Source of the DNA: Ascidiella aspersa
Taxonomy: Eukaryota
Length of the DNA: 64,000 bases
Direction of reading: 5' to 3'
NCBI GenBank assembly: GCA_963924565.1
Contig: OZ004611.1
Coordinates: forward strand, 26,660,001-26,724,000
Shown: positions 28,113-57,354 of the stretch, piece by piece
How positions within the stretch are numbered: the first letter of the stretch is position 1
Layout of the letters: each line of letters begins with the position of its first letter
Translations under genes and position numbers: made by a program
Notes under the pieces: model-generated
Seen by the model: the letters and a program-made list of their open reading frames with translations, nothing else
Database searches by the model: none
Told to the model about the DNA's origin: nothing

Positions 28113-31100
28113 ATGGTCGAGTTTACAACCAGCAATAAGTTGTTCCTGATGGCTTGTTTCGCGCTCCTAATCGCTTTCTTTCTCACGCAACAAGAGTGCG
28201 ACGCCGTTCCACTGGAAGCCAACGTAACCCAAGGTAAAACTTCATTAGTTTTATATTTTGGCAAAAATGAAGCAAATGCACTCTATGTATCAGACTTGAC
28301 AACTTTCAAAGTCTGCACTCCTTCGAGAAGCCCAGAAAATAGCCCATCGACACATGGCTATTTTAGCAATATTTTATTTTCTTGTTTTAAAACCATTTTT
28401 ATTTCTGCTTAAATAAATAAACTTTAACCAAGAAGTACCCAACCATCGGTTTTATTTCTATAGTCTCAGAAAAATAATTCTGACCTTTACGTAACATAAC
28501 TTATTTTTAATGCTTATACCAGTAATCTAAACTATTTTAAAGCGGCAAAGTGACCATAATACATTTAGAGATGTTTCGAGCAATATACTTTGGTGCCTTC
28601 AGAAAGGCTTTTACCTAAATCAGTGTAATCTTTAGGCTTATTTGTTTTACGTCATTTCACTTTTTTGTAGGACTCGCAACGCATTGGACAGACGAGCAAT
28701 CATACTCAAACCTGACCTACGAGAACGAAACAATTATTATACTGGCCGAAAACCAGTTTACCAACGAAACAGAGGTAAAATAAAAACTTGTATATAGGTA
28801 TAAAAACGATATCCCGTAGTCGTGGGCGTATCCTGGTATATCCCTCATAGGGTGCCATTTTTAACGCTCAAGGGTGCCGAGAGATATTTCAAATTCTTTA
28901 GGATTTCAATTTTGCTCTATTGGTGAGCTTCTTGATACAAATTGTTTGTGTACGGTAAAACTGCAAAAATTAAGAAGATTTTATCAACTTTATTGCACAA
29001 TTAATGTGCTGTTTCAAGTTCATTGTAACGTTACAGTTAACCACTCAGCAAAAATACGAGCAAGGGTGCCACGTATATTATAAAAATAGTATACTATTTA
29101 TAATTTCTGCAGGGTGCCGCAAGCCGAAAAATGTTGCGAAACAGTGGGTTAATAGGTTTTCCCGGAAAAGCGGGTCTTAACTGCTCACAATATATTTTTT
29201 CATCATAAGCTAGTTCAAAATAGCAATTATACAATTTATAAAAAAAGAATAAACTATAGTCGAAACATAAATCATGATTTCAAAAGTTTTCTCTATTAAC
29301 AATTAATATCGGTTCTAGCTTTATAAAGTTTTAGGCCTTCCCTAAGCTATACGCGTAAAATTAGTCAAGTTTTGCCGCATTTATTCAAAACTAAATAAAA
29401 CTAATACTCATGGAGTTCTCACAGGATTAAGAAAAAGGTTAAACAATAACTAACAAACTCCTGATGTCAATAACTACTAGAAGCCATATGTGAAAAAAGC
29501 TTATTGCAAAATAAACAAAGATATTGCCCCAAAAAACTACTTAGCCATATTTGTGTAAAGAATTATCACAGATAGTTGACATATAAAATATTCCATAGCG
29601 GTTTTTGCTTTATAAAACAGGGTGTGTAAATAACATTAGCTACAAAAAGGAAAAGTTCGTAATAACTGGCCTAAAGCGGTCACAATGTAGCGCCATATAC
29701 CAAGAATCGTAAACAAAAACAGTTTCTGCTGTGTATAATCGCATTTGAATAACACAAAGCTTAATTTATCAGGTGAATGTGCATCACATCGAAAAACGCA
29801 GCGTCTCAAATCGAATGAAAGGAAGATGCAAGCGATGTTTCTGCAAGTTCCGATCGTGCACACAGGTCAGACGAAGATGTAAGTTGTGTTTTTTTATACT
29901 TGTGTGTCTTGGCTTCACGATAAATTGTCAAACTTCACGATAAATTGTCAAACATCCCATGACTTTGTATAAAAGTAAATACATATACAGCAAAGTAATA
30001 ATAAAACTTTTCAATTAATTTTACGATTGCTTTGCTATGTACATGCATATTTACTTTACTTATAGAAACTGACGATTCCAGTATAGGATAAATATATACT
30101 CCTTTACAGAATGTCTGATCCTAATTTTACTCGGGTTTCCATGACTTTGATTACGACAGAATTGTCGAAAGAATATTTGCTTTTATATTTTAAGTATTCC
30201 CCGTAATTTACTTGCGAGAGCGAGGAACTGAGAATAATTATCTTGTTTGTTTTTTTCGACATTTAATCTGCTATCGTTCTAATCGTTTACCTAATAACCC
30301 TACTCCTAAAAATACCAAATATAGCGACAATTGGACTTTTGTTTCGATATTTTGTGTGCGTATAATATATATGATTTGTGAAACCTTCTGTGGCATTTTT
30401 GGCGTGCTAAAAATAAAAAAGGTTAGTACACTATAATAAAGAAAGTAAGGCAGCCCGAAAAAAAAACCTTCGTATTTAAAAACCTTTTGCGGAAAAAAGT
30501 CCTGACTAATCGGGACAGCTATATATCGGTCGAACTACGTCACAGATTAAGATCGTTCCTAATTCAATTCTCCCGTCGAGTGGTCAACAGGTATCACATT
30601 TCACGCTGGAAAACATTTCAAATTTCTCACGGAGGTTTCATTGAGAAAAATGCGACAGGGGTGTTCGTTTGGCCGCGATATTTTAGCCAGAAAACGGGGT
30701 GAACCAAGAGTTTTTATTGACGATCACTACAACCTAAGAGAGCGGGGGCTTTGTCCAGCTTTAAAGGTTCTGTTTGTGGGGTACACAGGGTGCCACTCTT
30801 GTGTCACATGCTGCACTGAGTGTTGATAGTCCTGTCTTGTGATACACTTGCGTCGCATTCGTAAATAGGCCAGTTCATCTATCGGTGAAAACAGGCCTTA
30901 TAACCTCGGGTTACTCGCATTCATTACGAAATGTGTGCCAGTAACTATTTTTCTGGGAATATTTTCGCATCTTTCTTATCCTAATCCAACAATGAAACCT
31001 TTCGGTGCAATCTGTTTGTTTTTTACCCTGTTTACAGGCATAAAAGCTTACAACAATGGCAGAAACACAAGGAAAAACGTGCATCTACACAGTTTATCTG

Positions 31101-31891
31101 TCGCAAAAACTATTTATTAACATCATGACCGTGGAATTTAAAAAAAAAAAAATTTGACATTTTTAGGAGACAAAAATAATCCTGTGAACATGACAATTCG
31201 TTTCATGGCATATTAAGCGCTTTCATGAAAAAGTTGAAAAATGGCGGCATATTCCAGCGCGTAAAACATAAATGGCCGGGTGCATATATTTCATAATAGG
31301 GATCTCCAGTAATATTGAACCAAAGGACTACTCTTTACCAAAAAGTAATATCGGTACTTTGTACGATTTTGCGATAATACTAGGGCCGATCCAAATTACT
31401 ATTGACATTTTAAACACAATTTGCAAACTAATGGAACAACTAATTTTTTTACGTAAATTCAATGGGTTACAGTAAGTTAACAACTAAATACAAAAGAAAA
31501 CTTAGGACTATTAACTTGAAAAATTACTACTGTACAATTTTTTCAATTTTGCCTCTTTAACTGCAGTAATAACGTTATTAATTCTTATTTGTAGCATACA
31601 TTTGCCAAAATATGGTTGTTAGTATGCTTGTTGCTATCGGAATAATTGCAGTATCGGGAAAATCTATAGGTCGTAACATGTCAACATCAGTCGAATTAAC
31701 GAAAGCAAGCAGATATGACTTTCCTGCATGCTTTTTTACAGCACCACAAGCCAAAATATCGACATGTTCGATTCGATTTATTTTTAAAGTGTATTTTTAA
31801 CGCAGGGCGCAAAATCTGCCTGCTTTGCCACATCCGAGTTTGCAACACGGTCGTTTTCGGTAGAGCGACACAATACTGGCGTTCCGGCTAA
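28113..31891 (+). CDS. Cysteine-rich cationic prepropeptide A (turgencin-like candidate antimicrobial peptide), 138 aa
   Basis: Exons 28113-28233, 28671-28774, 29773-29878, 31806-31891 (GT-AG, phases 1,0,1). Protein MVEFTTSNKLFLMACFALLIAFFLTQQECDA-VPLEANVTQGLATHWTDEQSYSNLTYENETIIILAENQFTNETEVNVHHIEKR|SVSNRMKGRCKRCFCKFRSCTQVRRRWRKICLLCHIRVCNTVVFGRATQYWRSG*. Signal peptide, acidic propiece, KR site, 54-aa mature part with 15 K/R and no D/E. Confidence 0.85.
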
Positions 31892-34800
31892 CAAGATGTA
31901 AAAGTGACCCTAATCACTTTGTCGCTAATTCGACCCCGGAATCCGAAAATGAACACTCGAAATGAACTCATCTCAAACGAGAAAACGACCAATGACGCAT
32001 TTTTTTGTTTGTGTGAAAACAGTTCGTCAAGTTTTTTGACGCTTTGTATAATTATTTATTTATGCCGTTACCTGTTTGAATTTTTTGCTGTTGTTGTTCT
32101 TTTATTTTATTTACTTTGGAATTTTAAGTTATTTTGACAACGAATTAAGGGTGGCCCAGGGATGGCATTTTAACCAGTGCCGTTAAATCAAAAGAACAAA
32201 ATTGTAAAAAAGTAATCACTAATTAAGTTCGCTAAAGTAAGGGGATACCCTTTTATATAAACATTTAGCGTTGTCTAACAAAGGGATATATATGACAATT
32301 GTTGTGCACGTTTCGCATGATTTATTTTACCTATATCTGCCAGATAAAACAAATTTGCATCTAAACTTGATAACCGTGTGCATTAGTTGCAATTTTTCGC
32401 AGTATTATGAATAGTAATATCACCATCATCGTATTGTGTTTTTTTTATCAACATTCACAAATATAAAAAAAAACTTTCTGATCGCACGATTTTGTATTAA
32501 TTATTTTTAAAGAATTTAAAGGAAAAAAACAATTTTAGTCGGATTTTAATCAAATTTATTACATGCTTGGGTATTCTAATTTTAGTTCTAAGTTATGTTT
32601 CAAAAATAGTACTGTGCTCGACGGCGTTTGTCGGTTAGTCAATTGGATCAGGTTTTTATAGCCACCCAGGTAAATTATTTAGCTTGTAAAGTACCAATCT
32701 TGGTATATGTCAGTCCATCACATTCGTCAGAAAAAAATACAATTTTATTAAAATTTGATTGTGAAGGCAGGTGATTCTGGTCGAGATTTCAATTTATTTT
32801 CCAGTTTTCCTTTATTCAGTGATTCTAATCTAATTTGGATAATAAAAAATAATCTAATTAAAAAATAGAAGAAAAAATCATGCCGTCCTAGGTTGCTCGA
32901 CAACGTAACACACATATTTCGTTTACCCACATTGCGCAAACTTCTGGCAATTTCGGAATGACTCAGGGTTGGGTGGACTCTGTTTAGTGGGCAACATTGC
33001 GCGGTTACAGTGTTGCGATTGGTGACAAGTCGATAGGCACAAACAGAAACCACTACAGGCCAAAGGACTTCGTGAGAGTGTCTATAGCGAAACCGAGGTA
33101 CGGTTACATTCGCGAATTGCTGTCAGCGTAAATACACGGCAGGGGGGGTCGTAGTTAAGCGCTTGGGAAAGCGGGAAATGCAAGAAATTTTCAAATAAGT
33201 CATTTTTGTTAATTTGTGTGTTTAAATACTTACAAGGCTTCAATGGTTAACATATCAAGGGTTAAGGCGTCACTTCATGTTGTTAAACCACCCAAAAAAT
33301 TAGTGGAATACAGGCTAGTTTAGAGAAACAAATGCATTTTATGTTTAGTAAGCTTTGAAGCATTTGGAATGTTATTTGTGGTATTTTTCTATCTGCACCG
33401 TTTTAGTTTGCCTTTAAAAACTGACCGGCATTATAAAAAAAATGCGCATCTCAAAATGCAGGGGATTCTTTAAATTTTAAAAGTGAAGTTAAGTGGTTTA
33501 CACACATTTATGGCGAATTTAAATCAAATCAAACGAAGCGAAAAATTGCTGTAAGATAAATTTACTAGATTTATGTCGTTTTATGTTGATGAGCTTCAAA
33601 GCAGGTAAAATATTTTGTTTGTATCAGCCTTTTCCGTTATTTTTCGAAAATAAATATAATTTAAAAAAAGCAGAAATATGTTATATCCCAGGTTTTCAGT
33701 TTATTTACTTTAGAACAGGGGTTCTTAAACTGGGGTCCATGGATCCCTTAGGGGTCCGTGAAATAGTTTTAGGGGGTCCATTAAGGCCTAATTAAAACAT
33801 TAGTGCAAATTAAGAAGTAATCAGATTATCAAAGAAACCTGTTTAATTAAAAATAAAACGGTTTTGAACTGAATGTGTTAAGACACCATTTCACTTTCAC
33901 ATTTTTGGATCGAAATCAGCTGACTAATTAGGTCTATTTGTATTGTGACGTAAATTTTTGACGTCATTTTTGCATTTTGTTGTCTCCGAGTGTCCACGCG
34001 AGATAAAAAAAATTGGTTCCGTTTATTTACCTTTGCCAAAAAAATAAAAATATTAAACCATGCAAGAGTGCAAGGTACGTATGCTTAAAACGCCCAATAT
34101 TTCTTGTACCGGCCTGCAATGTAAAGTCTACAAGCGAATCAAATTCACTAACCTTTAACGTGAGAAAAGTCTCCAGAGGTGAAACAAGTTGACATAATAT
34201 ACGATTCGGTTCACAAGCGCATCGCTTCCAGGAAAGCAACAACTAAGCGATGTAGCGTAAGTGGTACAAATGCTAATGCTGTGTGTTGTAGAGATACGAA
34301 ACCGGTAATTCCATTCATGTCAGGACAACAAGGTTTCGCATCGGAAAGCCAACGCCCATGGTTCGAAGTTATATCTCGGTGTTTTGAAACAGCCAGGGCT
34401 TTATTGTCAGGGCTGGGAATCAGACGCGAAGTCTGGTGTGAGTAAAACATAGCTGCTTTGGCGGCGTGACTGGGTGCCTATACAACCTGGCTTCGGTAGC
34501 TTGCGCCACTCCTTATACGTGCTACAGCTCATCATTCCAGGGTTAAACTAGCTTCCTGCCGCACCATTGGACTAATGGGTGTTGTGACAAGCATCACATC
34601 ATGAAACTGTACATTGGGCTATAGCGCTGAAGCCGTATTTACATACATGCTACCGAAAAAACGACAGAGAAAAAAGTGCAGTTTTTCGAAGTTAAATCCG
34701 TTAAATGAAGCAGAAAATCCAAGCGAGCGAGCATAGACCTGACAGCCTACATGTGAACGCATAATAATGCAACGTGCTTAGCGAGATTAAGGCACTGACA

Positions 34801-36295: not shown

Positions 36296-38864
36296 ATGAA
36301 CTTACATATCTTTCTGCTTCTGATGATTGTGGTAATTCTAGAGATATCAACAAAACCGAGCCAAGCAAAGACACCTTTTGATTCAAGCAGTCGTTTGAAA
36401 GGTATTTACAAATTCATTTAAACGTTTTACAGTGACAAATGACAGCCTCGAGGGCGAAAACATTAATGCGGGAATGCTACGAAAAGTCCCTGCAAAGCAC
36501 ACAATGTATGAATGCCGCCGCCAAAGCGAAGACTCAGCCCACATGGCACAGCTTCACAGTTTTCGGCAGAAGGCGAACTAGCAAAACCAAACGCTTTCAC
36601 TATTTTCTTGACTTTCACACACTAAACGAAACCCACATACTCTTTCTCTTTTGAATAACATACATAGGCATTTTAAGGTGTTTAATGAACCGTAACGGTT
36701 TTTACATTGCTCCAAGTCTCTATAAACATCCAACTTGAGTAAATACAGTTAGATGAAATAGTAACGGTACCTCAGGTTTTGTAGTGATCAACAGTGCAGA
36801 AAAAATTCATATAGGACTGTCTGTTTACTATGTATTGGACAGGAATTAATAGTAATAAAGACCAGTAATAAAAAAACGCCTAGTAATAAGGACCACGCAT
36901 AAACACTAGATCTTAAGCGTGGTTTCAATACAAAAAAGCCATAACATTTGAAAAAAATCGACATTTCGTTATTTACAAATGACTTAGCAATACCTTATTC
37001 CATCGATCGCAATCGTCACTCGTAATTATTGCCAAAACGTTTCTAAACAACGAAATGTCGCTTTTATCGAAAACTTAACGCTGTTACTTTGATCAAAATA
37101 GGAATTGCGTGGCAGTAATTTAAGAAATAAATATTCTTACAATTTTCGTCCATTAGTTGAAAAGCATTCAATTTAGTATTTGTACTTACACAAATAATAT
37201 GTTACTTGCATTGCAGTAAACGAACGAACGGTGGAACTCGCAAATAACGAGAAAACTTCAGCTATCCAAGGCCCGGTAACTAACCCATTTTATTTTTTCG
37301 ACGATGATATTATTCTAAAATTTTCGTTCTTATTGCTAAAGACTTGGACTTTAATTAACCTTTAACAGCTTTTATGGTATGAACCGCGCTCTTGGCTTTA
37401 AACAATGCTTTGCTGTACGACACATATTGTAAAATAAAAATAAATGAGTTTTCACATTAGAAACGTGTTTTGGGATGATTTCAAAAGCATAATTATTAAA
37501 CGTACCCAGATAGTCAACTCCAAAACGTGTCGTAGGTCATTATCAGTTCTTTGCTAAAACAGATTTCCTTATTGAAAATTTAAATTATTTAACGTACTGC
37601 CGAAGGTTACTAATTCTCGATAACCATATAAATTATTACCTTTCTTGTTTTGCTTCAAATTTTAGTTGACAGTCGTTCTGTTACGTCACAAGCGCTCGCA
37701 CCTCAACGAAAGCGAAAAACGGCAGAAGCGCTGTCACCGATACTGCAAAATCCACTCATGTAAAACTTACAAGCGGAGAACAGGTAAAAATGTCAGACTA
37801 TATACGTCAGTAGAAATGTGCGGCAATTCGTATAGCTTATTACAATACCAGATATTTTGGACAAAAAGTCCAAAAACAAACATCCTAAAACTAACATCCA
37901 AATCAAACGTCCTAAGGCTACGCCTATGCGTACACCAGTAGTAAAGATGCAGGTTTTATGTTACTGTTTTCTTATTATCAATAAGTTGCATTTTAAATTA
38001 TTGCTATTATTTTGGCCATATCTCATTGTTGGTTGCACAATAAAACTTGCATTAAAAGTGCGTCGCTAACTGAAAAGGGTTGGGAAGGACTGCTTTAGGA
38101 AATATAAAAAGGATTAATAGGTTTGTACTGCATCCGCAATTATTATAAAGTGCTATGGCAATTCTTATTCAGTGTAATAAATTTCCAATCTAAGGGACCA
38201 TGTTGGCCAATACTTTAAAAGTTTTAACGTAATGTTTTCAGGTTGCCTTGACAGTATTTGTTTACTATACGTCACCTTGTAAAGTGGAAAACGTTAGGTT
38301 AAATCGTGAAACTTAACTTTAAAAAAGTTAAAAAAAAGCTTCTAAAAATTAATTGCTTATTAGTAAAACGTCGGCACCGGTAATATCTTAGTATCGGCGA
38401 TGTCCGATTATAATAATATTATTGAAGCCGATACATGATATTATTTGATCGCATCGGCACTCGTCCGGCACTATTGTGGTATTGGTGCCGATTTGGCTGA
38501 GGTTTGCGATCTAACTTACAGATGTTTCTACGTCGAAAAAAAAATCTCTAAATACAGAATATAAATGTATTACTTTGGTTTTTATTTGACCAGATTTACT
38601 GAGTTCACAAAAGTATTGATGGTATATGGCGTTGGGTGGGACGGTTATACTTTTCACCCAAAGAGTGTCGATATCACATAAAATACGAAGTTTCGGGCAT
38701 CCGTCCAATTGTTTTTCGGAAACTTTCTTATGGCTAACCGAAGTCCGTTGGAATTTCATTTATGTACACCATAAAAAATGTACTGAAATTTTTATATTTT
38801 TGCAGTGCATAAAAGATGTGCTGTATGCAAGCTTCGTGTCTGCGGAATTCAGCTTCCCTTGTGA
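36296..38864 (+). CDS. Cysteine-rich cationic prepropeptide B (turgencin-like), 113 aa
   Basis: Exons 36296-36401, 37217-37275, 37666-37783, 38806-38864 (phases 1,0,1). Protein MNLHIFLLLMIVVILEISTKPSQA-KTPFDSSSRLKVNERTVELANNEKTSAIQGPLTVVLLRHKR|SHLNESEKRQKR|CHRYCKIHSCKTYKRRTVHKRCAVCKLRVCGIQLPL*. Two furin-type RxKR sites; C-x3-C-x4-C-x11-C-x2-C-x4-C. Confidence 0.87.
37915..38189 (+). repeat. 275-bp near-identical duplicate of 40861-41135
   Basis: Both run from aggctacgcctatgcgtacacc to gtaataaatttccaat, same length, only a few substitutions. Confidence 0.9.
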
Positions 38865-40522: not shown

Positions 40523-41038
40523 CATTGCTTCCCAACCAGTGGGTTGCGAAGCATTTCTAAATGTTACAGTTTTGTATTAGACCAGGAAATGATTGCATTA
40601 TGATTGCGTAACATTCATGCAACAATGTAACAAATACGTAACAGTTATATGTGTTTTGTTGAACTAACTGCTTTAGCACGTACACCCAGTGGCGTAGCCA
40701 GCCAAAAATGGGGGGAGGGGGGCAAAAGCATGACTATTGAAAGGCGTGACATGCCTGTGATCGACTGTTGTGGTACTGCTCATAAATGCCCCCCCCCCAA
40801 AAAAAAAAAATTTAAAACAGTAAAATATTTATAAATTTTTTTTGGGGGGCATGGCCCCTCAGGCTACGCCTATGCGTACACCATTAGTAAAGATGCAGGT
40901 TTTATGTACCTGTTTTCTTATTATCAATAAGTTGCATTTTAAATTATTGCTAATAATTTGGCCATATCTCATTGTGGGTTGCACAATAAAACTTGCATTA
41001 AAAGTGCGTCGCTAACTGAAAAGGGTTGGGAAGGACTG
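40523..41038. mobile_element. Nested hAT-type MITEs
   Basis: Outer element cattgcttcccaacc / ggttgggaaggactg with TSD ctttaggg/ctttagga. Inner element 40687-40874 (cagtggcgtagcc / ggctacgcctatg) with perfect 8-bp TSD cgtacacc. Confidence 0.78.
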
Positions 41039-44563: not shown

Positions 44564-47500
44564 ATGAACGTGAAAATGTCACTGGTTCTACTGATGTGTA
44601 TTTTGCTGGTGGCGCTGATTCAAACGACAAAAAGTGGCGCAATACAAGATGAATCGCTACGGCATCAAGGTAAGACAATATACAATTCTAGTACTGTATT
44701 GGGATTTAGACCGTAAATAGCTCTGTTCGAATTGGAAACAGTGGCGTGTAATCCAACAGAGAACCGTTAAAATATTTACTAAATAATTGATATTGGTTGA
44801 AATTAGGCTATTTAAGAGAATTCACCTCTCGGCACTATGCATAGGCCACTAGTCAACAATACAATTCTAGTACTGACTTAGGATTTAGTTTAGGACTGTA
44901 AACGGTTCTGTTCGAATATAAAATAGTGGCGTGGAATCTACAAGAGGACGGTTAAAATACAGACGAAAATGTTTAATGTCGGTTGAAATTAGGCCACCTA
45001 GGATAACTAAGGTCTCAGTACTATACATACTAACCAACAGTACAAATTTACAAAATAATTATGTACACATTAAATTCACATAGCTTAAGCTTTGTTTAGT
45101 GCTTTAATGACTACAAAATACTTTGTCCAGCTTCATTGCTAAATGTTAACAGAAATCCAGTTATACAAGTGCGTGAGAAGCGAGTTTACTGCGCAAATGT
45201 CTTAGAGGGGGCACCACGAATAAAATGTGTGATCTTAGGCAAGTTGTGCACTCTTTTAAAAAGCAATTGTACTTCAGAAATTTTCACTAAACTGTCCCTG
45301 GTTTCTTTCAATGCGCTGGCATAAGTTGTTTATCGAGTCACGGTTCAATGCACATCTTAACCTATTGTTGCGTTAAGCAAAGGTCCGTGACCAACTGTAT
45401 TAAACTTTAAAAAGAAATATATATAAGCCCTTGATGTTGGAAAATGATTTTCGACGTCCAAAATGCTACCTACTTCTGTATGGGCCTTGATATCCATATT
45501 TAGCATACCAATATCTACCATACCCATTACGCCGGATAGAATTACAGCGAAAAAGACTATACGTTGGGTTCTAACCTTAAAACTTAAACGTATTTCTGAT
45601 AAATCTGTACTTGCTCTAGTCTACACTATAGTAATGGACGGAATAACTTAATGTGACCCACAGACCAAACACGTACTACCCAAATATTTTATAATAGTTC
45701 TAACATCAATTTTACCAAATAAATGGATTTTAAAGAAACAACCAGATACCCAGATAACCATTTTGTAAATCATTCTGTGCTTACAACTAGGGATGTCCGA
45801 TTATATCGGTTCGAAGCCGATACACGATGCCAAGTTGTAGTATCGGTACACGTCCGATATTATATCGGTTACACAAAATATAGGATTTTTAGCCATGATT
45901 TGCGATATAAAGCAGCGATTCTACCTTGAATATAAATTTAACAGAAACATAGTAGGTTAACAACTGGACCTAACTAAACTTCCCAACGCTTTAAAACAAA
46001 TATCTTTACATGTTGTAATTTTATCTCTGCTGGTTTTGCTTAGTAATGACGTCATTTGGTATCGGATCGCGATACTTTTTATTCAAATTATATAGGGGTA
46101 CCGGAAAGTGCTAAGTATCGGACATCACAACTTACAACCCTGGGCTGTTTATCTTCATATATCATAACATGAAAACTGAACGGCGAAAAATTATATATAT
46201 TAAATATAAAAACCTGTATTTCAGGAAAGCTTTCGACGAATTTGGCCAGCCAGTCTCAAAACACCGAATTGACTGCTCTTGACGTCGAACTGGTGCGTTT
46301 CTAAACGTAAAAATATTGTATTTTTTTATCTAAAAACACAATTTCAATTTCAGATCGGAAGATAATGATGTTGTTTGCTAAATTGAGCATGTTTTCCTTA
46401 AACAATATTTACAAAGAGACTTTCGGTTTAAAGCTTTCAGCTAAAGTGTACGACGCAAAATTAGCGTTGAAATTTATTTTGGTAAAAATATTTACCATAG
46501 AAATCAGTTCATATTCGTTGTTGACTTTTATAAAGAATCTTCTATCTAACTTGAATTGCGTTTTTCTGTTTATTGTGGCAATATTGCGAGTTTCGATTTT
46601 TTAAGGAAAAAATTATCATCGCAAAACGTTGCTCCTTTTTTCCTAATTGTCTAAATATCGCGAAGGGATATATTTTACCGTAGTTTCTAGTTTGGATATT
46701 CGTAACTCCAATATAAACACAGGACAACATGGAATAACGAAACACTTGCAATAATACATAAACAGAAGAAACGGCATGGTACCTTATAAATCCAAATATA
46801 TACCTAGAGGTGAAGACAGATTAAAAACTCTATAGTAAAAAATAAGTAAAACTGTCAGTAAAAAATGTTACTGTTTAATTATTGCAAACTCCATTCAAAA
46901 CGTTTTTTAAAACAATTTTCGCCAAATTTTGCAAGCGTGCCCTGCTTCCTAAATGCATTCTTAAACACGGAGATTGTGCGTTAAATAGGTCTTAACCAAA
47001 ATATGTGCGCTTTCAAAGCAGGAAGAAGACTTGCCACACGTGAGAGTTAGACGATCCTACCGCAGGAATTACTTCCACCGACGATGCAAGATTTTTGCTT
47101 GCAAACTACGCTCGTGTGCTTTCCTCAGAAGATATAAAGGTTGGATTCAAATTATGTGTGTTTTCATGCGAAAGTCAGTTACAAGAATTTAACGCAGTAT
47201 TATTAAACTGTGTGCCTCGCGCGCAGAACCTTTTTGTCATTTCGCAAAATAAACCATACGTGTTATATTAGGAGGCGCAGCCATGCGAGACTTGAATGTA
47301 CAATATCCTTTATAGGTGAATCAGGTGGCACTATATAAAGACAACTTGTATTGAAATCTTGACACGCTTTTGCACAAACGAGTTACATCAGGTCACAGTA
47401 GGGATCTGATGAAGCACGGTTGTACGAAAGCTTACCAAGACTTTAATATAATTTGTCTTTACATAGTGCCACCTGATCACCCTATTTAGAGTTAGACAAA

Positions 47501-48268
47501 TACAGCTACCTATGATATAGCTGGCAATAGGGGTGATTGTTAAATTAAAATTGTATTAGTTTGTAAAACGTTTTAGACGAAATTAATTTTGACGTTTAAC
47601 CCTTTCTCCTTAATTTTATTGCAAGTTCCAATAGTCACTAAATTGCGAGGGGTAGAACTCCTGAAAAATTTGGAAGGGGGCACAGATTTAATTCGTAGCT
47701 TTTCCGTCATTGTTAAAACAATGTCTTGCAAAAAAATAACAAAAGCTGTTAGAATGCATTCTACTTGCGATTTGAATTACAATAGAGGGTTTACAAAGGA
47801 AAATGTCAAAAAAAGTTATACTGGTTCTATATACTCCCCTTAAATGTGTAAGTTGGTCGGACAAAGCAAACGAAATACCGCCGCTTTAATGGTGGCCGAT
47901 TAAGGGTTTTGTGGCCCGAATACAAAGCTTTATGGGGGCTGTTCGCAAACTGCAAGCGCTTTAACTTAAAGCAAGCTACACTGTAGCTCGCTAAAGGTTA
48001 AAAACAAGCGCTAATATCAAAGCCCACACAGAAGTATACTATAGGTAGCATTTTGAACGTTTTGAATAAATCTAAAAAAAAAAAAGTGATATTCGGAACG
48101 TTTAAAAAGTCACCTACTTTTGTGTATGGGCTTTGATATTCTTACTACGTCTTACTACTGCAACCTCCAAACTTTATGCTCCAAAACGCTATATCTTCTT
48201 GTACATTTTCAGTGAGAAGAAACTGCCAACGCTGTCACCGGTTCTCGTGCGGAGTCAAGTTATTTTAG
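44564..48268 (+). CDS. Cysteine-rich cationic prepropeptide C (turgencin-like), 115 aa
   Basis: Exons 44564-44669, 46225-46292, 47022-47139, 48213-48268 (phases 1,0,1). Protein MNVKMSLVLLMCILLVALIQTTKS-GAIQDESLRHQGKLSTNLASQSQNTELTALDVELEEDLPHVRVRR|SYRRNYFHRRCKIFACKLRSCAFLRRYKVRRNCQRCHRFSCGVKLF*. RVRR furin site; 46-aa mature peptide with 15 K/R, no D/E, 6 Cys. Confidence 0.88.
44679..45045. repeat. Diverged ~180-bp tandem duplication in intron 1 of gene C
   Basis: tacaattctagtactg ... ctgttcgaat ... agtggcgtg ... ggttgaaattaggc occurs twice in tandem. Confidence 0.75.
45788..46130. mobile_element. hAT-type MITE (gggatgtccgat family)
   Basis: TIRs tagggatgtccgat / atcggacatcacaa; perfect 8-bp TSD cttacaac (45780-45787, 46131-46138). 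Related decayed pieces near 10050-10380, 21270-21356 and 38395. Confidence 0.8.
47311..47484. repeat. Inverted repeat / MITE-like hairpin in intron 3 of gene C
   Basis: atcaggtggcactatataaagacaa ... ttgtctttacatagtgccacctgat with ~50-bp arms. Confidence 0.7.
48013..48140. mobile_element. Small palindromic MITE (aatatcaaagcccatacagaagtag family)
   Basis: Arms aatatcaaagcccacacagaagta / cctacttttgtgtatgggctttgatatt. Full copy at 62660-62788; decayed or half copies near 4990, 25510-25660, 45463 and 57055-57130. Confidence 0.7.
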
Positions 48269-51200
48269 GAGATAGCGAGAGTTCAAAGCAATAAACTGAT
48301 GTCGTCGAACGGCACATGTACATATACAGCCTTCGAGTCAAACAGTTTCAAAACCTTCCCTTAACGAAGATGGAAACGCCCCGCGACTTCAGTTTTTCCC
48401 GAGCATTATTGCATTCGTTATATTTTACTTTTTACAACTATGGCGGTTTTGTCACCTATAATATGCAATTCATAACGCAATGAGAGTACTGGCGTGGGGG
48501 GTTGGGATGGATACTTAGCACAAGATTGAGGTTTTACGGGGAAAATTCGCTTGCTGTGGGATATGGGAAACCTCGGAAAACGTTGCGGGCAAATTTACGT
48601 ATATTACTTACTTAGAAATACGTAATGGGTAAGTTTGAAAGATGGGGTAACACCAAGTGGGCCAAACAGACTTGTAATGACCTGACCGTGGCAGAAATTC
48701 GTTAAAAGCATTTTTCCTGTGCCTTTAAAGAATTAAATTTCCCGACGTGCACTTTGGTCATGCAGATATCTATTTTGCCGGTAAACAGTCGCAGTTTAAT
48801 AATGCATTTTAGACAGGCGTTCCCAGCAGCATTATATGGAAGCCGCCGAATTTCCCCGTTTGCCAGTTTTTGTGCACATTTTGTTTTGTAAAGTCGCCGC
48901 GGTATTTTTTCGTTGCTTCTCACGGCGCAAATGGCGTTTTCATGCAAATTATATTCGCGATAAGGTCTATGACCCCCTTGCTGTGTTTACAAAGTGCCCC
49001 CCACCTCCAGGTGGTTACCAGGGGTGGTTTAATTGCTGTCGCGCCAACAAAAAAACGCTTTGAACTGGTGAAAATTCGCAGGGTATCGCGTTTAGGTTGC
49101 ATCACAAACAGTTCCCGATATTCACCTGTTTGGGTAAAGATTGTAATGCACCTCTTTCTAAAGGGCAAAATAAAGCGGAATTCCGGTAAAACCCTTCTCC
49201 TTCTTTACTTTGCGTCGTTATTATTTTGACCTGTGACGTTGTGTGCCACGGATGGCTCTGGGTTAGACCTTTACCCTATTCCTAAGGGGTAAAAGGACTT
49301 TTGTTAAAGATGTTTTCTCTCCATTAAGTTAAGCTAGTTGCTTTGTCTCGCAAAATGCTAAAAATTAACGTATTGTCAAAAACCGTTTTCATTTAATAAA
49401 AGTGTTTACTTTTTACAAGACAAGACATACTTGTCACAGTAGTTCTATGTGTTAGCACGACCAGCCAATGTCAAATATATTTTTTGAATGTCAAATACAT
49501 TCAAAGAGCCTTACACAGTTCAAACGACTTTGCCTGCCAGTTACAGTGTTGCCGTTTTCTTTACAATGCGTGATGTTGTGATGTATAATCGTATAAATAC
49601 ACGTTTTATGAATATTCGGCTATTCGTCTTACTCTACCTGTTATAGGATAAACGAAGTCATAGGTTATACCAGTCAAAACTCAGTTATTTGCAGAAAGAA
49701 TTAGTTTAGGAACAAAATGTTATTAGCAACGCTTAAGTGTATAGAGCAGTGTTTCTCAGCCTTTTATGGCTAGCGGCACCCCTCAGAAATAATAAATTGA
49801 TTGAGCACCCCTAAAAGATTTTTCCGAGGGTAATACACACATATAACAAACCATAAACGAAACTGGAACAACTCGCATCAACTTTACACAACATACGAAG
49901 TTATAACTGGATTCGTTCCACTCTAATTTTACCCAAATGTTACAGTTGAGCAAAAATCAGACTCTTAAAGATTCTAAAATATCTCTCGGCACCATTTAAC
50001 GTTAGAAATGACACCCCAGGGTGCCGCGGCCTCAAAAACCTCATTTTACACATGATTTTCAAGAAATTTCCCCTTATATAACCGCAGTAAAAAGGGTGGA
50101 TCAACGAAATAACATTGCGGCCGAGTTGATATTTCCTATAGTATCATTACGTACGAATGAAAAGGAGATTGTTTGGCAAAACACGGAGATAAATCACAAA
50201 GTTTAGCCCCAACAAGCCTTAAGTCGACATTACACTGCGGTCTCCAGAAAATAAAAATTATGGTTCTATGGTCTCAAAAATGTATTGCCTAGCTTTACTA
50301 ACAATTATCATAATGTTAGTTATATGGTTTATTAAAAGCAATAGTCAGTACTAATATTTATTACTTTAAAGATTATTACTTCAAACTAATTCTTATTACA
50401 AGCGCATTTTATTGAGATACCCAATCCAACGTTTATAAACTAAACTTAAGAGAAATAACTGCGTAAATAAAAAAAACAAGCCAAACAAAAGAAATTCAGG
50501 ACGGCGTCATAAATCTGATACAGTAATCAAATTTTAATTTTATTTTATTTATTTGAGGGGCGGTGCGTAGTCTCATTTTACTTTTTCAATCAATGAACTA
50601 TGATCCCAAGAAATGCTCTATTAATAGAACGTATGGGGGAATTATTGGGCAGTACAAACATCAGTTTGTTAGAAGGTTAGAGTTAAATGACTATAGCCTT
50701 TAAATTTTCTGTTTAAATTTCTGTTTTGATACATACCTTAATTTCACGTGTTAATAGCATCGCGGTGCTTTTATTCGTTATCTGATTTAGAGAAAAAAGC
50801 ATTTAAAATTCCATACAAAAACTTGTATTTTTACTGTTTAAGTTAAGGGTTGTCAGCGGACATACATGTTTAGAAACTCGCAAACAGGCAGCTCTAGAAA
50901 TAAAGCTGGAGACAACAATGTCACATGGGGGTTACAGCATTTAATCAATCCAAACCGCCGGCACAACTAGCCTGTCTATATTTAACGCCAAAACGTCACA
51001 ATTAGGAACACCTGAGAACTAAGTTATCTTGGAAACTGGGTAAAATTACCTGGATGACGCAACTTATCATTGGACTTCGCGAAACCGAAACGTGACTTTT
51101 AAATTCCTCGCTATAAAAAGCCAAACAATAGCGAATAAAATCTCTAACAAAAGGGTGATATCCGTTGCGCACTAAAATACCGAAATTAAATGTAAAAAAA

Positions 51201-52462: not shown

Positions 52463-52470
52463 TATATAAA
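52463..52470 (+). promoter_or_regulatory. Candidate TATA box of peptide gene D
   Basis: gggc-TATATAAA-aaag, ~150 bp upstream of the ATG at 52612. Confidence 0.45.
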
Positions 52471-52611
52471 AAAGTTCGTCTTAAAAACGGCTGCAGACAA
52501 GGTGGCTTACGCGACGAAGATCATTGTAGACAAAATTTAGTCAAGCCTAACGTTTAAGTGTCATTTAGAAGGGACTGTGTAATATTAAAGGGAGCTACGA
52601 AAATTGCTGCG

Positions 52612-55600
52612 ATGTATACGAGTCATAAAGTTGTTCTCTTTCTTGTCATTTCTTTAATGATTTTGTCGGATTTTGGTGAAACGAGGTACACAAGACGGTC
52701 TTCAGGTAAGTGATGCTTTTAGCACAAAAAGGTGTATCATTTGAGCTTATAAATAATTGTGAATTTTATACTATACAATGAAATTGTATGGTCTCCTATC
52801 TAAATTATAGCTTTACAGTTTTACCTAAAAAGTGTTAGTTTTATTTACAATACACTATATAGCAATGATGTATCCGGCAAAGGTAACACACAACCGGGTT
52901 AAGAAAATTACGAAGTACCAAAAATGCTTAATCTAAAATCAAACAAATAACTTATAATTCGTGGTATTCTCTGAAATAAGTATTGGGGCTGTGACAAGGC
53001 CAGACATTAGTCAGATTTTATCAATGGGTCAACTAAATCACGAAGAATAGAGCCTAAGAATATTTAGCCTTGGTAATAAAGCCAGGTCATCTATTTGAAT
53101 AGAAAACAAACAAAACCTGTTTTTATACAGCGAAGTATGTATTTCTATCTATGCTGAGAAATGATTCATCATCAGTTTTTACTAAAAACTCTAATTTGCT
53201 ATATGTACAGAAAATTACATTTATTGTCTTCGTGAGATTTCAAGTGTTACGCTTAAAAATAAAACAGTAATCCATATTTTTTTCAGAAGACGGAAACAAC
53301 GACATGAAGCGTGAAAATGAGATTCCAAGAGTGGTACGTAATAATTACGTATAAAAAGCAAAAACAACATACGCCAAAAAATCGTTCTGTTTTAGCTGCT
53401 GGACATTACCAACCAATGTACTGTACCTCATTTTTTCTTGTTTCCACTTGCCGATTTGCTTTAAAAAGTGATTATAAGTTAAGAAAATATATCTTAGGAT
53501 CACTTTGTCACTTGTTATGTGCCAACAAGCAAACCATGTTTACAGTTTTAACCAAAAGTGCCTCATGATTTCATGTAGGCAGGGGTTCTCAACCTGGGGG
53601 CCTTTTTATAAGGGGTCCATGAACAAATACTATTTTTTTAATTTATCATCACTAAGTCTACCGGTACTCCACTATAACAAACTAAAATAAATTAAATCTT
53701 TCTTTGTATACTTTTAGATTTATTAATAACATTATTTTAAAATTTGCGCAATGGCTACCCCTGCAAAAAGAAGAAAATATAATAAATAGTTATCTGTGTT
53801 GTATTTATAACATTTAAAGTTCTTGCTACCGGTTACTGTATAAACCAGTTTTTTAATCAAAATGACGTTTCCTAATTTTAACAAAAGGTTGAAAAAATAG
53901 GGGGGTCATTGATTTCTCAAAATTTTCAAAGGGGGACACGGTGTAAAATAAGTTGGGAACCCCTGATTTAGGGTGTCAAAAAATGAATCAACATTTTTAT
54001 GTAGGAAGATGCAAAATGAATGCTAAGAGTTGGTAAAATGTATGCCAATATGAATCTATTGAATCAAACTGTCAAGCGGTTCAACCATATTTATACACTC
54101 CAACAAAATACAACGACAGCTTGGTCTTATTTGTTTATTTAAATATTCAGAAATTTTGTTGGCTGTGTGTATAACCCAAACGTTCTCTATATTATTGCTT
54201 AACCTTAACAATGTAAACGTAATATATCAATTATAAAACCTGTAGATTATTATTTATGTTCGATGCCAGCATTTCTATACATTTAGGTCTGTCACCTTCA
54301 TTTTTAAACGACGTTAATATAAACCAGAGATTTTCAATCGGGGGTCGCAAAGCGTTTTTAGGTAGTGCTTATTTTTCGAATTAGTATAAAATTTACAAAA
54401 CGTTTGTACTTTAATTGCGCGGTAGGTTTATTTATTTAAGCACCTGTTGAGATGTTATTTTTCTTGATTTTAATTATCTACTCGACTATATAAAACAGGG
54501 GTCGGCAACCTTTTGCTATAGTCGCGGTTAAAACAAACTCTGCAAGATTTTTGCGGCCCGTAATCAATTACCACTTTTGTTTAAAATGTGCGACTTTTAA
54601 GTATTTATCACAATAACCATTATCAGGTGCGGATCAAATTTCTTTATGTAACTGAAGCTTAATCGGGAACACACAATAAGACCTGAAAAGCAACTATACC
54701 TAAAGAAGAAAATTCTTTAAAATTATACGTTCAAACTCGTCTAAACAAGACCTAATCCTGTCAGAATACGTCCTAAATTCATCTCCTGTAAACTGTAGGT
54801 AGAGAGTGTGGGACGATCGGGGGTCGTTGGCCTGGCATCGGCCGTTTTGGTGTCGACGTTTGGACGCCCTAGTTCAGTGGTTCCCAAACTATTTTATTCC
54901 GTTGCCCAACGTATTTTACAAAACAGATGGTGGCCATTGTTTTTCACATCTATAGTTATGACTAGTACATATTAATTACCAAAAGTTTTCCAATATTATA
55001 AACATTTTTATTCCTTGATACCATTTGTCTAACAACAAATGTAACTTTATTGAGTTTCTGTTCAGTCTGCTGAAGTTAAACAACTTGCGCGCACAGTTTT
55101 CGCAGTCACAAGACATTTTAGATATGCCAACAATTATTTTAGTAAAACAAAACGCGTAGTTGCAACATTTTTAAATAGCTCTTTGGTCCACCTAAGGTAG
55201 TCTCATGGCCCACAGTTTGGGAACCACTGCCCTAGTTTGACCGGCACCGTTAGGGAGCCGCTGTTTTGGCACCAGATTTTTGGCCCTGTTTGGGGTTATT
55301 TAGACGGTACAACGACTATTATGTATTAGATCTATTTTTGTTTTATTTATTCCAAACTGTGTTTTATTCTGACGTTGTTGTTCTTTTTTCGGTATTATGA
55401 CTCGAGTCCGTTTAATCTATTAAAGTCAAGCAACGCTTGAAGCTGAAAACAATAGCGTTTGTTCGGTTTAAGTAGAAATAAAATAATTCAGAAGTAAAAG
55501 TGACGCTTTGGGCACACACAATATATGCACATATTTAACTCGTTGCCGTTGTTGAAGGTTTTTCTTAATCACGTAAAGTAGTCTATCCGAGTAAAACTAG

Positions 55601-57354
55601 TAGGAATTAGGTCGGAGAACGTGTAAATAGTGTTGGCTTTTTCATGCGCATAACAAGTTTGAGGTGTTCAAATTCACTTACAACAACAATCTATTTAAAT
55701 ATAAAAAATGATGCGCGCAAAGCACGATTTTTTTTGCATTTCCGTATATTTAAAATATCCAAAAACATAGGAGATGACCTCGTGTTTAGTTTGTAAGATA
55801 TCGCGTACCAGATGATTTAGCAGGATCCGGATCGTGGGCTGCGGTTCCGGCTGGCCCCTAGTATAAAACATTAATTCCGTTCGCAGACAACATAACGTAA
55901 AATATTATCATACAAACATTTGAGGGTCGGTGAACGCTTCAAGGTCACCAAATGGGTCCGCCAAGACACAAAGGTTGCGAGCCGCTGTTCTATAAATTTT
56001 GAAGTTGGTTTTTCATGTTCGCTGCTAGTATTTTTACTTATTGCTGGTATTTTTACTTATTTCTGGTATTTTTACTTATTGCTAGTATTTTTACTTGCTG
56101 GTATTACTAGTATTTTTCACTCATTGCTTTTTGAGGAGATGGCAATATTATGTGATGTTGATACAGGTAAACGCTACCACTGAATCACGAGCGATGGAGA
56201 GACAGAGACGAAGCACAGACGACGACTGGAAGTTTTACTGTTTCACCTTCACAAATTATTGCTTGCGTCGCAGCTGCAAAGAAGTGCTGCACAGAAGAGG
56301 TAAAAAATTCAACAAAACGGTTTTTTCAAACTAATTCAAACGGTTACTTCAAACTAGTCGTGTCAGAGCGCACATAATGTCTTCATTGAGTTCTAAATAA
56401 ATCGAAAGTGATGGTCAGAAATAATTAATCAACGAGGACTGTTTGTGTTGGAACAGTTTATGGGAGAATTTTAAAGGTTAAACAATCGAAAATAACTGAT
56501 GCTTAATTGTTTTAACCGTTTTGTGTTAAAATAAAACTTGTATAGTTCAGCACTTTAAACAGTATTAGTGGCGGGTAGATTTGTGGTAACCTCAGTACTA
56601 TTATTGCGACGAGTCCAACACCAGTACCAATACCATATAGGTACAGTTAACCCTAATTTGGTGAAATACTCCTGAATACCAACAGTTCAATAAAACTGTT
56701 AAAATACTGCGTTGTATGTCGATCAAAAATATGTTTGCCTAAAAAACAGCAAAAAAATGCGTCATAATGAGAATGAAAATAAGCAATCACATAAGAACTA
56801 AAATATTCAAAATTCTCCTATTAATTCGATCTGCTCCTAAAGTGGCTTTTAAATCATGAAAGTCAATAATTTCTTTAAAAATGAGTTTGCGTTAGTCTTT
56901 CTGCAGAGTTTAAAAGCGTTTTAAAATTTAAAAAAATGAAAAGAATATACTCTTTTGGTAAAAAACGCATTTTGTTTTCTATGGATTTCAATAGAAACCT
57001 ATTTCTTCATATCGTATATCAAAGAGTCTTTATATTAAACTATTAAAAAATGAATAATGAATAAAGAGTTATTCAAAACGTTTAAAATGATAGCTATACT
57101 TCTGTATGGGCTTTAATATTCTTACTATAAGTCCTACCGCAACCTTCAACCATTTTTATCTAAAAAAAATAATTAAACTTCAAAATATAAACTCAAAGCC
57201 GCTTGAGTATTGACACTTTTTAAGACTGTAGCAATTAGCATACTTCAAACGCATAACATTTCTCTCATAAATTTCAGGTGTCCGAAGCATAGCGTTCCGG
57301 GGCTGTATGAGGTGTCATATGAGCTACTGCGCTGGTCAAAGCGCTCCTTTCTAA
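52612..57354 (+). CDS. Cysteine-rich prepropeptide D (divergent member of the same family), 116 aa
   Basis: Exons 52612-52705, 53287-53333, 56167-56299, 57278-57354 (phases 1,0,1). Protein MYTSHKVVLFLVISLMILSDFGET-RYTRRSSEDGNNDMKRENEIPRVVNATTESRAMERQRR|STDDDWKFYCFTFTNYCLRRSCKEVLHRRGVRSIAFRGCMRCHMSYCAGQSAPF*. RQRR furin site; C-x6-C-x4-C-x16-C-x2-C-x4-C. Confidence 0.85.
53580..53965. mobile_element. hAT-type MITE in intron 2 of gene D
   Basis: TIRs caggggttctcaac / gttgggaacccctg; TSD imperfect. Confidence 0.65.
54496..55860. mobile_element. Nested hAT-type MITEs in intron 2 of gene D
   Basis: Outer ends caggggtcggc / gctggccccta with TSD atataaaa/gtataaaa. Inner element 54875-55229 has perfect 16-bp TIRs cagtggttcccaaact / agtttgggaaccactg and perfect 8-bp TSD ccctagtt. 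Confidence 0.78.
56022..56130. repeat. Minisatellite, ~16-19 bp unit (ct(a/g)gtatttttacttattg)
   Basis: About 5-6 imperfect copies immediately upstream of the exon 3 acceptor of gene D. Confidence 0.75.

What the first reader, a model, noticed from the sequence alone, without database searches (positions are those of the whole stretch)
28113..57354. Hidden tandem cluster of four genes for a cationic six-cysteine secreted peptide family (candidate new antimicrobial peptide family)
Seen in sequence: four co-oriented genes spaced ~8 kb apart, none visible as a whole ORF. Each has four coding exons with identical intron phases (1,0,1) and the same layout: exon 1 signal peptide, exon 2 acidic/polar propiece, exon 3 basic cleavage site followed by Ser plus three Cys, exon 4 three Cys and stop. 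Mature regions: A SVSNRMKGRCKRCFCKFRSCTQVRRRWRKICLLCHIRVCNTVVFGRATQYWRSG (K+R-D-E = +15); B SHLNESEKRQKRCHRYCKIHSCKTYKRRTVHKRCAVCKLRVCGIQLPL (+12); C SYRRNYFHRRCKIFACKLRSCAFLRRYKVRRNCQRCHRFSCGVKLF (+15); D STDDDWKFYCFTFTNYCLRRSCKEVLHRRGVRSIAFRGCMRCHMSYCAGQSAPF (+5). Consensus R|S...C-x(3-6)-C-x3-S-C-x(10-16)-C-x2-C-x4-C. Established: signal + anionic propiece + convertase site + cationic disulfide peptide, in a fast-diverging tandem cluster, is the architecture of defensin- and hepcidin-type host-defence peptides. Inference: an ancient, diversified effector-peptide family that gene predictors and homology searches would probably miss.
Basis: partly seen in the sequence, partly recalled or inferred. 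Interest (0 to 1): 0.95.

Follow-up and report, generated by a model that had tools for sequence, protein, structure and literature searches.

The report
Four hidden cationic six-cysteine peptide genes
A sea-squirt chromosome carries four neighbouring small genes, each for a secreted, very positively charged six-cysteine peptide built like an antimicrobial-peptide precursor; selection has clearly kept them, but transcription was not shown and a defence role is only inferred.

Summary
Four co-oriented split genes lie at 28113-57354, with start codons 8.0-8.3 kb apart. Each has a signal-peptide exon with a phase-1 donor, an exon with an invariant dibasic-Ser site plus three Cys (four in A), and a last exon with C-x2-C-x4-C and a stop. 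Profiles of exons 3 and 4 hit only these four loci in the 308-Mb genome. The four units share no DNA similarity beyond interspersed repeats. Aligned codons match at positions 1 and 2 but are random at position 3, so these are old duplicates kept by protein-level selection.

Three things are not shown:
- Exon 2 of B, C and D is only my best guess.
- The one RNA test allowed found no reads on gene B, so no junction is confirmed.
- No homologue, Pfam family or solved structure matched.

Turgencins, ascidian antimicrobial peptides whose genes are unknown, share the cysteine framework. They show no significant residue similarity (P=0.24).

Best reading: a new, apparently lineage-restricted family of furin-processed, hyper-cationic disulfide peptides, most likely host-defence effectors. 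That role is inferred.

The scan earlier reported another secreted cysteine-peptide family elsewhere in this genome (s1-788247). My profiles do not connect the two.

The parts
28113..28233 (+). Gene A exon 1: ATG, signal peptide (15-residue hydrophobic core), phase-1 donor AAG|gtaaaa
28671..28774 (+). Gene A exon 2: acidic, Asn/Glu-rich propiece (35 codons), acceptor ttttttgtag, donor GAG|gtaaaa, phase 1 to 0
   Evidence: the best defined of the four exon 2 candidates
29773..29878 (+). Gene A exon 3: ..EKR|S, four Cys, phase-1 donor GAT|gtaagt
31806..31891 (+). Gene A exon 4: C-x2-C-x4-C, 15-residue tail ending in Gly, stop
36296..36401 (+). Gene B exon 1: ATG, signal peptide, phase-1 donor AAG|gtattt
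37217..37275 (+). Gene B exon 2 (tentative): 20-codon polar propiece
   Evidence: picked by frame and splice sites only, no RNA support
37666..37783 (+). Gene B exon 3: RHKR|S furin-type site, three Cys (C-x3-C-x4-C), phase-1 donor CAG|gtaaaa
   Evidence: no RNA reads
38806..38864 (+). Gene B exon 4: C-x2-C-x4-C and stop
   Evidence: no RNA reads
44564..44669 (+). Gene C exon 1: ATG, signal peptide, phase-1 donor AAG|gtaaga
46766..46809 (+). Gene C exon 2 (tentative): 15-codon acidic propiece, weak acceptor, donor GAG|gtgaag
   Evidence: weakest of the exon 2 picks
47022..47139 (+). Gene C exon 3: RVRR|S furin-type site, three Cys (C-x4-C-x4-C), phase-1 donor AAG|gttgga
48213..48268 (+). Gene C exon 4: C-x2-C-x4-C and stop; AATAAA 22 nt after the stop
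52612..52705 (+). Gene D exon 1: ATG, signal peptide, phase-1 donor CAG|gtaagt
53287..53348 (+). Gene D exon 2 (tentative): 21-codon Asn/Glu-rich propiece, acceptor tttttttcag
56167..56299 (+). Gene D exon 3: RQRR|S furin-type site, three Cys (C-x6-C-x4-C), phase-1 donor GAG|gtaaaa
57278..57354 (+). Gene D exon 4: C-x2-C-x4-C and stop

Best explanation
Four tandem paralogous genes (A-D) each encode a 107-138-residue prepropeptide.

**Shown from sequence**
- An N-terminal signal peptide on its own exon.
- A conserved dibasic-Ser site at the start of exon 3.
- A six-Cys core split by a phase-1 intron between Cys3 and Cys4.
- Long-term purifying selection on the encoded residues.

**Inferred**
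- The precursor enters the secretory pathway.
- A furin or proprotein-convertase-type enzyme cuts after [KR]-R. This releases a 46-54-residue peptide held by three disulfides, with pI 9.1-11.4 and 17-33% Lys+Arg.
- This peptide most likely acts as a host-defence effector that binds polyanionic microbial surfaces, as other hyper-cationic disulfide peptides do.
- The paralogues have diversified everywhere except the cysteine frame and the processing site.
For: **The genes are real and specific**
- Exon pieces and canonical splice sites are at the stated places.
- The spliced models give intact ORFs of 138/113/107/121 aa with phases 1,0,1.
- The only four signal-peptide-like start exons in 128 kb of both strands each lie 1.4-3.6 kb upstream of an exon 3.
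- Genome-wide, the exon-3 and exon-4 profiles hit only these four loci. Exon-3 hits are E 8e-19 to 5e-13 and exon-4 hits E 3e-7 to 2.5e-4.
- The exon-3 pattern occurs 4 times against 0.05 expected.

**Selection**
- The four units share no blastn similarity except interspersed repeats.
- Aligned codons are 53%, 50% and 34% identical at positions 1, 2 and 3.
- 45 of 80 identical residue pairs use different codons.
- In columns that were not used to anchor the alignment, positions 1+2 match 95 times against 69.5 +/- 7 expected (P about 0.001). Position 3 is at the random level.

**Processing site and product**
- The site contexts are HHIEKR|S, LLRHKR|S, HVRVRR|S and MERQRR|S.
- Net charge is +5 to +15.

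**Precedent**
- Ascidians do make cationic six-Cys antimicrobial peptides with a near-identical cysteine frame, the turgencins (PMC7024374).
Against: - **No transcript evidence:** gene B had no RNA reads on any exon in run X4, with about 6% of the run read.
- **Polyadenylation signals:** A and B have no AATAAA or ATTAAA within 800 nt of the stop.
- **Exon 2** of B, C and D is unverified.
- **No homologue** in any other organism was found. A 34-kb walk beside a related GPCR gene in another assembly found none either.
- **No clear amphipathic periodicity** in the two Cys-bearing halves.
- **Peptide D** is only +5.
- **Peptide A** has an odd number of Cys.
- **No activity, tissue or induction data.**
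Confidence: 0.5

Rival explanations
1. The peptides are secreted signalling or regulatory ligands (hormone-, neuropeptide- or cytokine-like, or reproductive) and not microbe killers. The same signal peptide plus convertase-site architecture also makes prohormones.
For: - The architecture of signal peptide, propiece and dibasic site is shared with prohormones (established knowledge).
- The strict invariance of the Cys frame and the R|S site fits a receptor-binding fold as well as a defence fold.
- There are further basic pairs at both ends of the Cys3-Cys4 loop.
- An LDLa-plus-7TM GPCR of the relaxin-receptor/GRL101-like type lies 19 kb upstream on the same strand.
- Gene B is silent in a bulk RNA run, as a rare-cell-type transcript would be.
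Against: - Net charges of +12 to +15 in 46-54 residues are far above those of typical hormones.
- Four strongly diverged paralogues in tandem are more typical of effector families than of ligands.
- The Cys pattern (3+3) does not fit insulin/relaxin (2+4).
- Gene neighbourhood alone is weak evidence.
Confidence: 0.2
2. The peptides are toxin-like or deterrent molecules (ion-channel or membrane-active against predators, foulers or competitors), similar in kind to crotamine, ShK-type or helical-hairpin toxins.
For: - Small, basic, three-disulfide peptides made from prepropeptides and encoded in fast-diverging tandem arrays are typical of animal toxins (established knowledge).
- The x4 and x10-11 spacings loosely recall ShK (my recollection; not a test).
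Against: - No Pfam match, including ShK-type domains, at E up to 10 on the exon pieces.
- No PDB sequence match.
- Ascidians have no known venom apparatus (established knowledge).
Confidence: 0.1
3. The four genes are relics. They were kept by selection for a long time but are now silent or dying.
For: - No RNA reads on gene B.
- No canonical polyadenylation signal after A and B.
- Seven Cys in A.
- No conserved upstream motif shared by the four genes.
Against: - All four keep an ATG, open frames, 24 canonical splice-site dinucleotides under the models, all framework Cys and the processing site.
- Four independent relics staying intact after synonymous sites have saturated is unlikely.
Confidence: 0.1
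4. Chance open frames in AT-rich DNA, with no genes at all.
For: No direct transcript evidence.
Against: - 4 hits against 0.05 expected for the exon-3 pattern.
- The profiles hit only these four loci genome-wide.
- The start exons are unique in the window.
- The codon-position asymmetry.
Confidence: 0.01

Closest known systems
Turgencins A and B (antimicrobial peptides of the colonial ascidian Synoicum turgens; PMC7024374)
   Same: - Ascidian origin, cationic, six Cys with none adjacent.
- Nearly the same frame: turgencins are C-x3-C-x4-C-x7/8-C-x2-C-x3-C. Gene B is C-x3-C-x4-C-x11-C-x2-C-x4-C.
- A basic loop lies between Cys3 and Cys4.
- Peptide A ends in Gly, a possible amidation signal.
   Different: - Here the peptides are 46-54 residues, not 35-36, with a longer loop and x4 (not x3) before the last Cys.
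- The CxMAC and KKxGG motifs are absent.
- Non-Cys residues are no more alike than shuffled controls (P=0.24).
- B, C and D lack a C-terminal Gly.
- Turgencin A finds nothing in this genome.
- Turgencin genes and precursors are unknown, so gene structure cannot be compared.
Defensin-, big-defensin- and hepcidin-type host-defence prepropeptides
   Same: - Signal peptide, propiece, basic processing site and a small cationic disulfide-rich product.
- Tandem, fast-diverging gene clusters.
   Different: - The cysteine spacing and number do not fit. By my recollection beta-defensin is C-x6-C-x4-C-x9-C-x6-CC and hepcidin has 8 Cys.
- No Pfam or PDB sequence match.
- The charge density is higher than in most members.
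The secreted 'cysteine-hairpin' peptide family reported by this scan elsewhere in the same genome (s1-788247)
   Same: Same genome, small four-exon genes, and a secreted Cys peptide built like an antimicrobial-peptide precursor (as that note states).
   Different: - My exon-3 and exon-4 profiles find no locus outside this window, so the two are not detectably homologous.
- I had no coordinates for that family and could not align it.
[quoted passage not shown]
   Same: Large sets of diverged, signal-peptide-led, very cationic small disulfide peptides that act on bacterial membranes. The turgencin authors likened the turgencin helix-loop-helix to viscotoxins.
   Different: Plant families with 4-6 Cys in other frames. 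This is an analogy of kind only, and no homology was tested or expected.

Membership tests
Turgencin family | Six non-adjacent Cys spaced C-x3-C-x4-C-x7/8-C-x2-C-x3-C | tested here: inconclusive
   B matches at x3, x4 and x2, but has loop x11 and last spacing x4. The first spacing is x4 in C and x6 in D, and A has an extra Cys.
Turgencin family | Shared motifs CxMAC and KKxGG | tested here: not met
   Absent from all four peptides.
Turgencin family | Residue similarity beyond the cysteines | tested here: not met
   The Cys-anchored BLOSUM62 total is no better than shuffled turgencins (P=0.24). Turgencin A gives no hit in the genome.
Turgencin family | Disulfide ladder Cys1-6, Cys2-5, Cys3-4 | not testable with these tools
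   Needs folded peptide and disulfide mapping. The joined peptide could not be sent to the structure tool.
Turgencin family | C-terminal amidation (precursor ends in Gly) | tested here: not met
   Only A ends in Gly. B, C and D end in Leu, Phe and Phe.
Cationic host-defence prepropeptide (functional class, not a homology family) | Cleavable N-terminal signal peptide | tested here: met
   Short n-region, 11-15-residue hydrophobic core and small residues at candidate -3/-1 sites in all four. These exons are unique in the window. The test is heuristic, as SignalP was not available.
Cationic host-defence prepropeptide (functional class, not a homology family) | Basic convertase site before a cationic disulfide-rich mature part | tested here: met
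   Invariant [KR]-R|S, which is R-x-[KR]-R in B, C and D. The mature part has pI 9.1-11.4 and 6-7 Cys.
Cationic host-defence prepropeptide (functional class, not a homology family) | Anionic propiece balancing the cationic peptide | tested here: inconclusive
   Propiece charge is A -11, C -5, B +2 and D +1 with my exon-2 picks, and exon 2 is unverified in B-D.
Cationic host-defence prepropeptide (functional class, not a homology family) | Expression in immune or barrier cells; antimicrobial activity | not tested
   The only RNA test was gene B in one run, with no reads.
Beta-defensin / big defensin / hepcidin / ShK-type domains | Match to the family profile or its cysteine frame | tested here: not met
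   No Pfam family at E up to 10 on any exon-3 or exon-4 piece, other than two chance-level unrelated hits. No PDB match to the exon-3 profile beyond E 0.4.
Insulin/relaxin superfamily | B chain with 2 Cys, A chain with CC-x3-C-x8-C | tested here: not met
   The Cys are distributed 3+3 and none are adjacent.

The most novel reading that the evidence does not exclude
These four genes are the first genomic view of the turgencin class. Under this reading, ladder-disulfide cationic peptides of ascidians are made from four-exon prepropeptide genes, with a furin site and an intron between Cys3 and Cys4. They have diversified so fast between ascidian lineages that only the cysteine frame survives. That would give the gene and precursor architecture that the turgencin discoverers said was missing, and a way to mine the class in other tunicates.
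Probability: 0.2. Interest if true: 0.65.

Novelty: new variant of a known kind. Interest (0 to 1): 0.45.

Why it matters
- **Gap in knowledge:** tunicates are the closest invertebrate relatives of vertebrates and rely on innate defence. Almost all their known antimicrobial peptides are linear helices. The only cationic six-Cys ones (turgencins) have no known gene.
- **What a confirmed family would add:**
  - a new effector class to chordate innate immunity;
  - four natural hyper-cationic (+5 to +15) disulfide scaffolds to test;
  - evidence that exon-wise cysteine-frame and intron-phase reading finds genes that homology searches miss.
- **Limit:** without transcript or activity data it remains a well-supported gene family with an inferred role. 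Lineage-restricted secreted Cys-peptide families are common in animals.

Tried and rejected
1. **RNA support.** The RNA run X4 gave 25 reads, nearly all on repeats, none on B's exons, and no splice joints. This is uninformative for A, C and D.
2. **Protein homology.** All four searches found nothing:
   - a word search with the exon-3 open frame of B;
   - an exon-3 profile against 1.84 billion representatives;
   - Pfam and PDB;
   - ESM Atlas features.
   Power is low for a 40-position profile, and this species' own proteins are not in the library. The best neighbour-gene hit is 48% identical.
3. **More family members in the genome.** None were found. Weak hits L005-L010 are low-complexity noise.
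4. **Turgencin homology.** The frame is alike but the residues are not, and there is no genomic hit with turgencin A.
5. **Synteny walk.** I walked from the closest relative of the neighbouring GPCR (P0002, an ENA assembly contig) 34 kb downstream, and scanned +/-10 kb around P0001. No exon-3-like or exon-4-like frame turned up. Orthology of those GPCRs is unproven.
6. **Shared noncoding sequence.** The only C/D intron similarity is a roughly 175-bp interspersed repeat with thousands of copies. No shared upstream k-mers or NF-kB-like sites were found.
7. **Helical versus beta amphipathicity** of the two Cys halves showed no consistent signal.
8. **Left out by rule.** Joined models were built only inside scripts from window.fa, to count length, charge, mass and codon statistics. 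No 3D model of the mature peptide exists here.

Full report
**What is there**

The window is part of a 308.6-Mb sea-squirt assembly (G000:C5:26660001-26724000). Reading the DNA around them gives canonical borders.

- Exon 3 opens after a polypyrimidine-AG at 29773 (A), 37666 (B), 47022 (C) and 56167 (D).
- Exon 3 closes at a phase-1 GT donor at 29878, 37783, 47139 and 56299.
- Exon 4 opens at 31806, 38806, 48213 and 57278, and runs to a stop at 31891, 38864, 48268 and 57354.

**Start exons**

A scan of both strands looked for ATG-ORFs with a hydrophobic core of at least 11 of 12 residues, followed 75-140 nt later by a phase-1 G|GTA donor. It returned only four loci (plus in-frame internal ATGs of two of them): 28113, 36296, 44564 and 52612. 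Each lies 1.4-3.6 kb upstream of an exon 3. The start codons are 8183, 8268 and 8048 bp apart.

**Exon 2**

Exon 1 ends in phase 1 and exon 3 starts in phase 0. An intervening exon of length 3n+2 is therefore needed.

- In A it is clear: 28671-28774, acceptor ttttttgtag, donor GAG|gtaaaa, Asn/Glu-rich.
- In B (37217-37275), C (46766-46809) and D (53287-53348) I could only choose the best of many frame-compatible candidates.
- For B and C, a direct in-frame join of exon 1 to a phase-1 acceptor a few codons inside exon 3 is also possible on paper. Reading the frames by eye, no such acceptor exists in A and only a poor one (no polypyrimidine tract) in D.

With these models the ORFs are intact: 138, 113, 107 and 121 residues.

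**More than chance**

- An exon-3 regex ([KR]RS, then three Cys with x1-6 and x4 spacing) hits exactly four times in the window, against 0.05 expected in first-order Markov simulations.
- A profile of the four exon-3 peptides, searched six-frame through the whole genome, hits these four loci at E 8e-19 to 5e-13. Nothing else comes below E 0.2, and the weak hits are low-complexity noise.
- The 18-position exon-4 profile likewise finds only these four loci.

**Evidence for selection**

The four 6.5-8.5 kb units share no blastn similarity except two interspersed repeats. One of these is a roughly 175-bp palindromic element with thousands of copies genome-wide. The duplications are therefore old. 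Despite this, all four keep the following:

- the ATG;
- open frames;
- splice dinucleotides;
- intron phases;
- the R|S site;
- the Cys frame.

In 31 gap-free aligned codons, identity is 53%, 50% and 34% at positions 1, 2 and 3. Of 80 identical residue pairs, 45 use different codons.

Leaving out the anchoring Cys and KR-S columns, positions 1+2 match 95 times against 69.5 +/- 7 under column permutation (P about 0.001). Position 3 is at the random level, 34 against 33.3. This is the signature of long purifying selection on the protein. It is my main reason to call these real genes.

**The products**

- The site contexts are HHIEKR|S, LLRHKR|S, HVRVRR|S and MERQRR|S. B, C and D thus carry a full R-x-[KR]-R furin motif.
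- From the Ser, the peptides are 54, 48, 46 and 54 residues, with pI 11.4, 10.2, 11.2 and 9.1 and net charge +15, +12, +15 and +5.
- The Cys spacings are x3-6, x4, x10-16, x2, x4. A has a seventh Cys inside the first loop.
- Ser is invariant before Cys3.

**Transcription was not shown**

Only one RNA run of the species was offered (X4), and one read-laying run of at most 6 kb was allowed. I chose gene B because it is the most compact.

- About 6% of the run was read.
- 25 reads were laid, mostly on two high-copy repeats.
- No read fell on any B exon, and no splice joint was seen.

This does not refute the family, because the tissue is unknown and sampling was shallow. It is the one direct test I ran, and it was negative. 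A and B also lack AATAAA or ATTAAA within 800 nt of the stop. C has AATAAA at +22.

**Comparison with what is known**

- No Pfam family, no PDB sequence, no ESM Atlas cluster and none of 1.84 billion protein representatives matched.
- The library does hold ORF calls from other ascidian-like assemblies, but not this species.
- Turgencins A and B of Synoicum turgens are the nearest known thing. They are cationic and have six Cys spaced C-x3-C-x4-C-x7/8-C-x2-C-x3-C with a 1-6, 2-5, 3-4 ladder. Their discoverers state that no gene or cDNA is known (PMC7024374), and the 2026 follow-up paper mentions none.
- Gene B differs from that frame only in loop length and one spacing.
- Against homology:
  - Non-Cys residues are no more alike than shuffled controls (P=0.24).
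  - The turgencin motifs are absent.
  - Only A ends in Gly.
  - Turgencin A finds nothing in this genome.
- I therefore file the family as turgencin-like in frame, with membership not established.
- Insulin/relaxin, defensin, hepcidin and ShK frames do not fit.

**Surroundings**

- Upstream, at 7771-9186 (+), is a single-exon LDLa-plus-7TM receptor of the GRL101/relaxin-receptor-like type, with further LDLa frames at 1154-1528 and 4902-5333.
- I used its closest relatives to try a synteny walk in another assembly. 34 kb downstream of P0002, and +/-10 kb around P0001, held no family member.

**Rule-bound omissions**

Joined models were assembled only inside scripts from window.fa, for counts and codon statistics. 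No 3D model of the mature peptide was made. A hydrophobic-moment test of the two halves was inconclusive.

**Earlier scan notes**

- s1-790941, on this window, suggested the turgencin frame. I tested it as described above.
- s1-788247 reported another secreted Cys-peptide family of about 15 genes elsewhere in this genome. My profiles find no link to it.

**Verdict**

- A real, old, four-member family of secreted, furin-site-bearing, hyper-cationic six-Cys peptides: about 0.85.
- Host-defence function: about 0.5, inferred from architecture and the ascidian precedent.
- Novelty: a new family within a known kind.
- Interest is moderate (0.45) until transcripts, peptides or activity are shown.

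Noticed in passing
window 7771-9186 (+), with LDLa-like frames at 1154-1528 and 4902-5333: A single-exon LDLa-plus-rhodopsin-type 7TM receptor (GRL101/relaxin-receptor-like, without LRRs in this exon) lies 19 kb upstream of the peptide cluster on the same strand. Its best database relatives are 45-48% identical ORFs from ENA assemblies, and Ciona and Styela hits are 28-39% identical. Whether the peptides could be its ligands is pure speculation.
   Followed up: partly
window 48013-48187 (intron 3 of C) and 57060-57165 (intron 3 of D): A palindromic MITE-like element of about 175 bp (21-nt inverted arms). It had 2423 first-look candidates and 79 scored matches on all large contigs at 70-81% identity. 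It sits just upstream of exon 4 in both C and D, apparently by independent insertion.
   Followed up: partly
window about 37929-38040 (intron 3 of B) and about 40520-40650: A very high-copy repeat, with summed contig depth of 2000-9000 in the DNA run against about 50 around it. The few RNA reads laid on this stretch mostly come from it, including reads that join the two copies.
   Followed up: no
window 28113, 36296, 44564, 52612: Start-codon spacing is almost constant (8183, 8268, 8048 bp). Yet gene lengths differ (3.8, 2.6, 3.7, 4.7 kb) and no noncoding similarity is left between the units.
   Followed up: no
window 34800-35190: RNA reads at depth about 2, all with the first mate on +, lie between genes A and B. 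This suggests an unannotated transcript or expressed repeat, possibly on the minus strand.
   Followed up: no
window 31817-31831, 48224-48238, 57304-57318: Exon 4 of A, C and D reads C-x2-C-H, the letter pattern of the haem c attachment motif. B has Lys in place of His. In a secreted disulfide peptide this is probably coincidental, but the His is conserved in three of four.
   Followed up: no
window 28850-29146 versus 49747-50016 (inverted): Intron 2 of gene A and the spacer after gene C share two repeat fragments of 51-69 bp at about 80% identity. This looks like another interspersed element.
   Followed up: no
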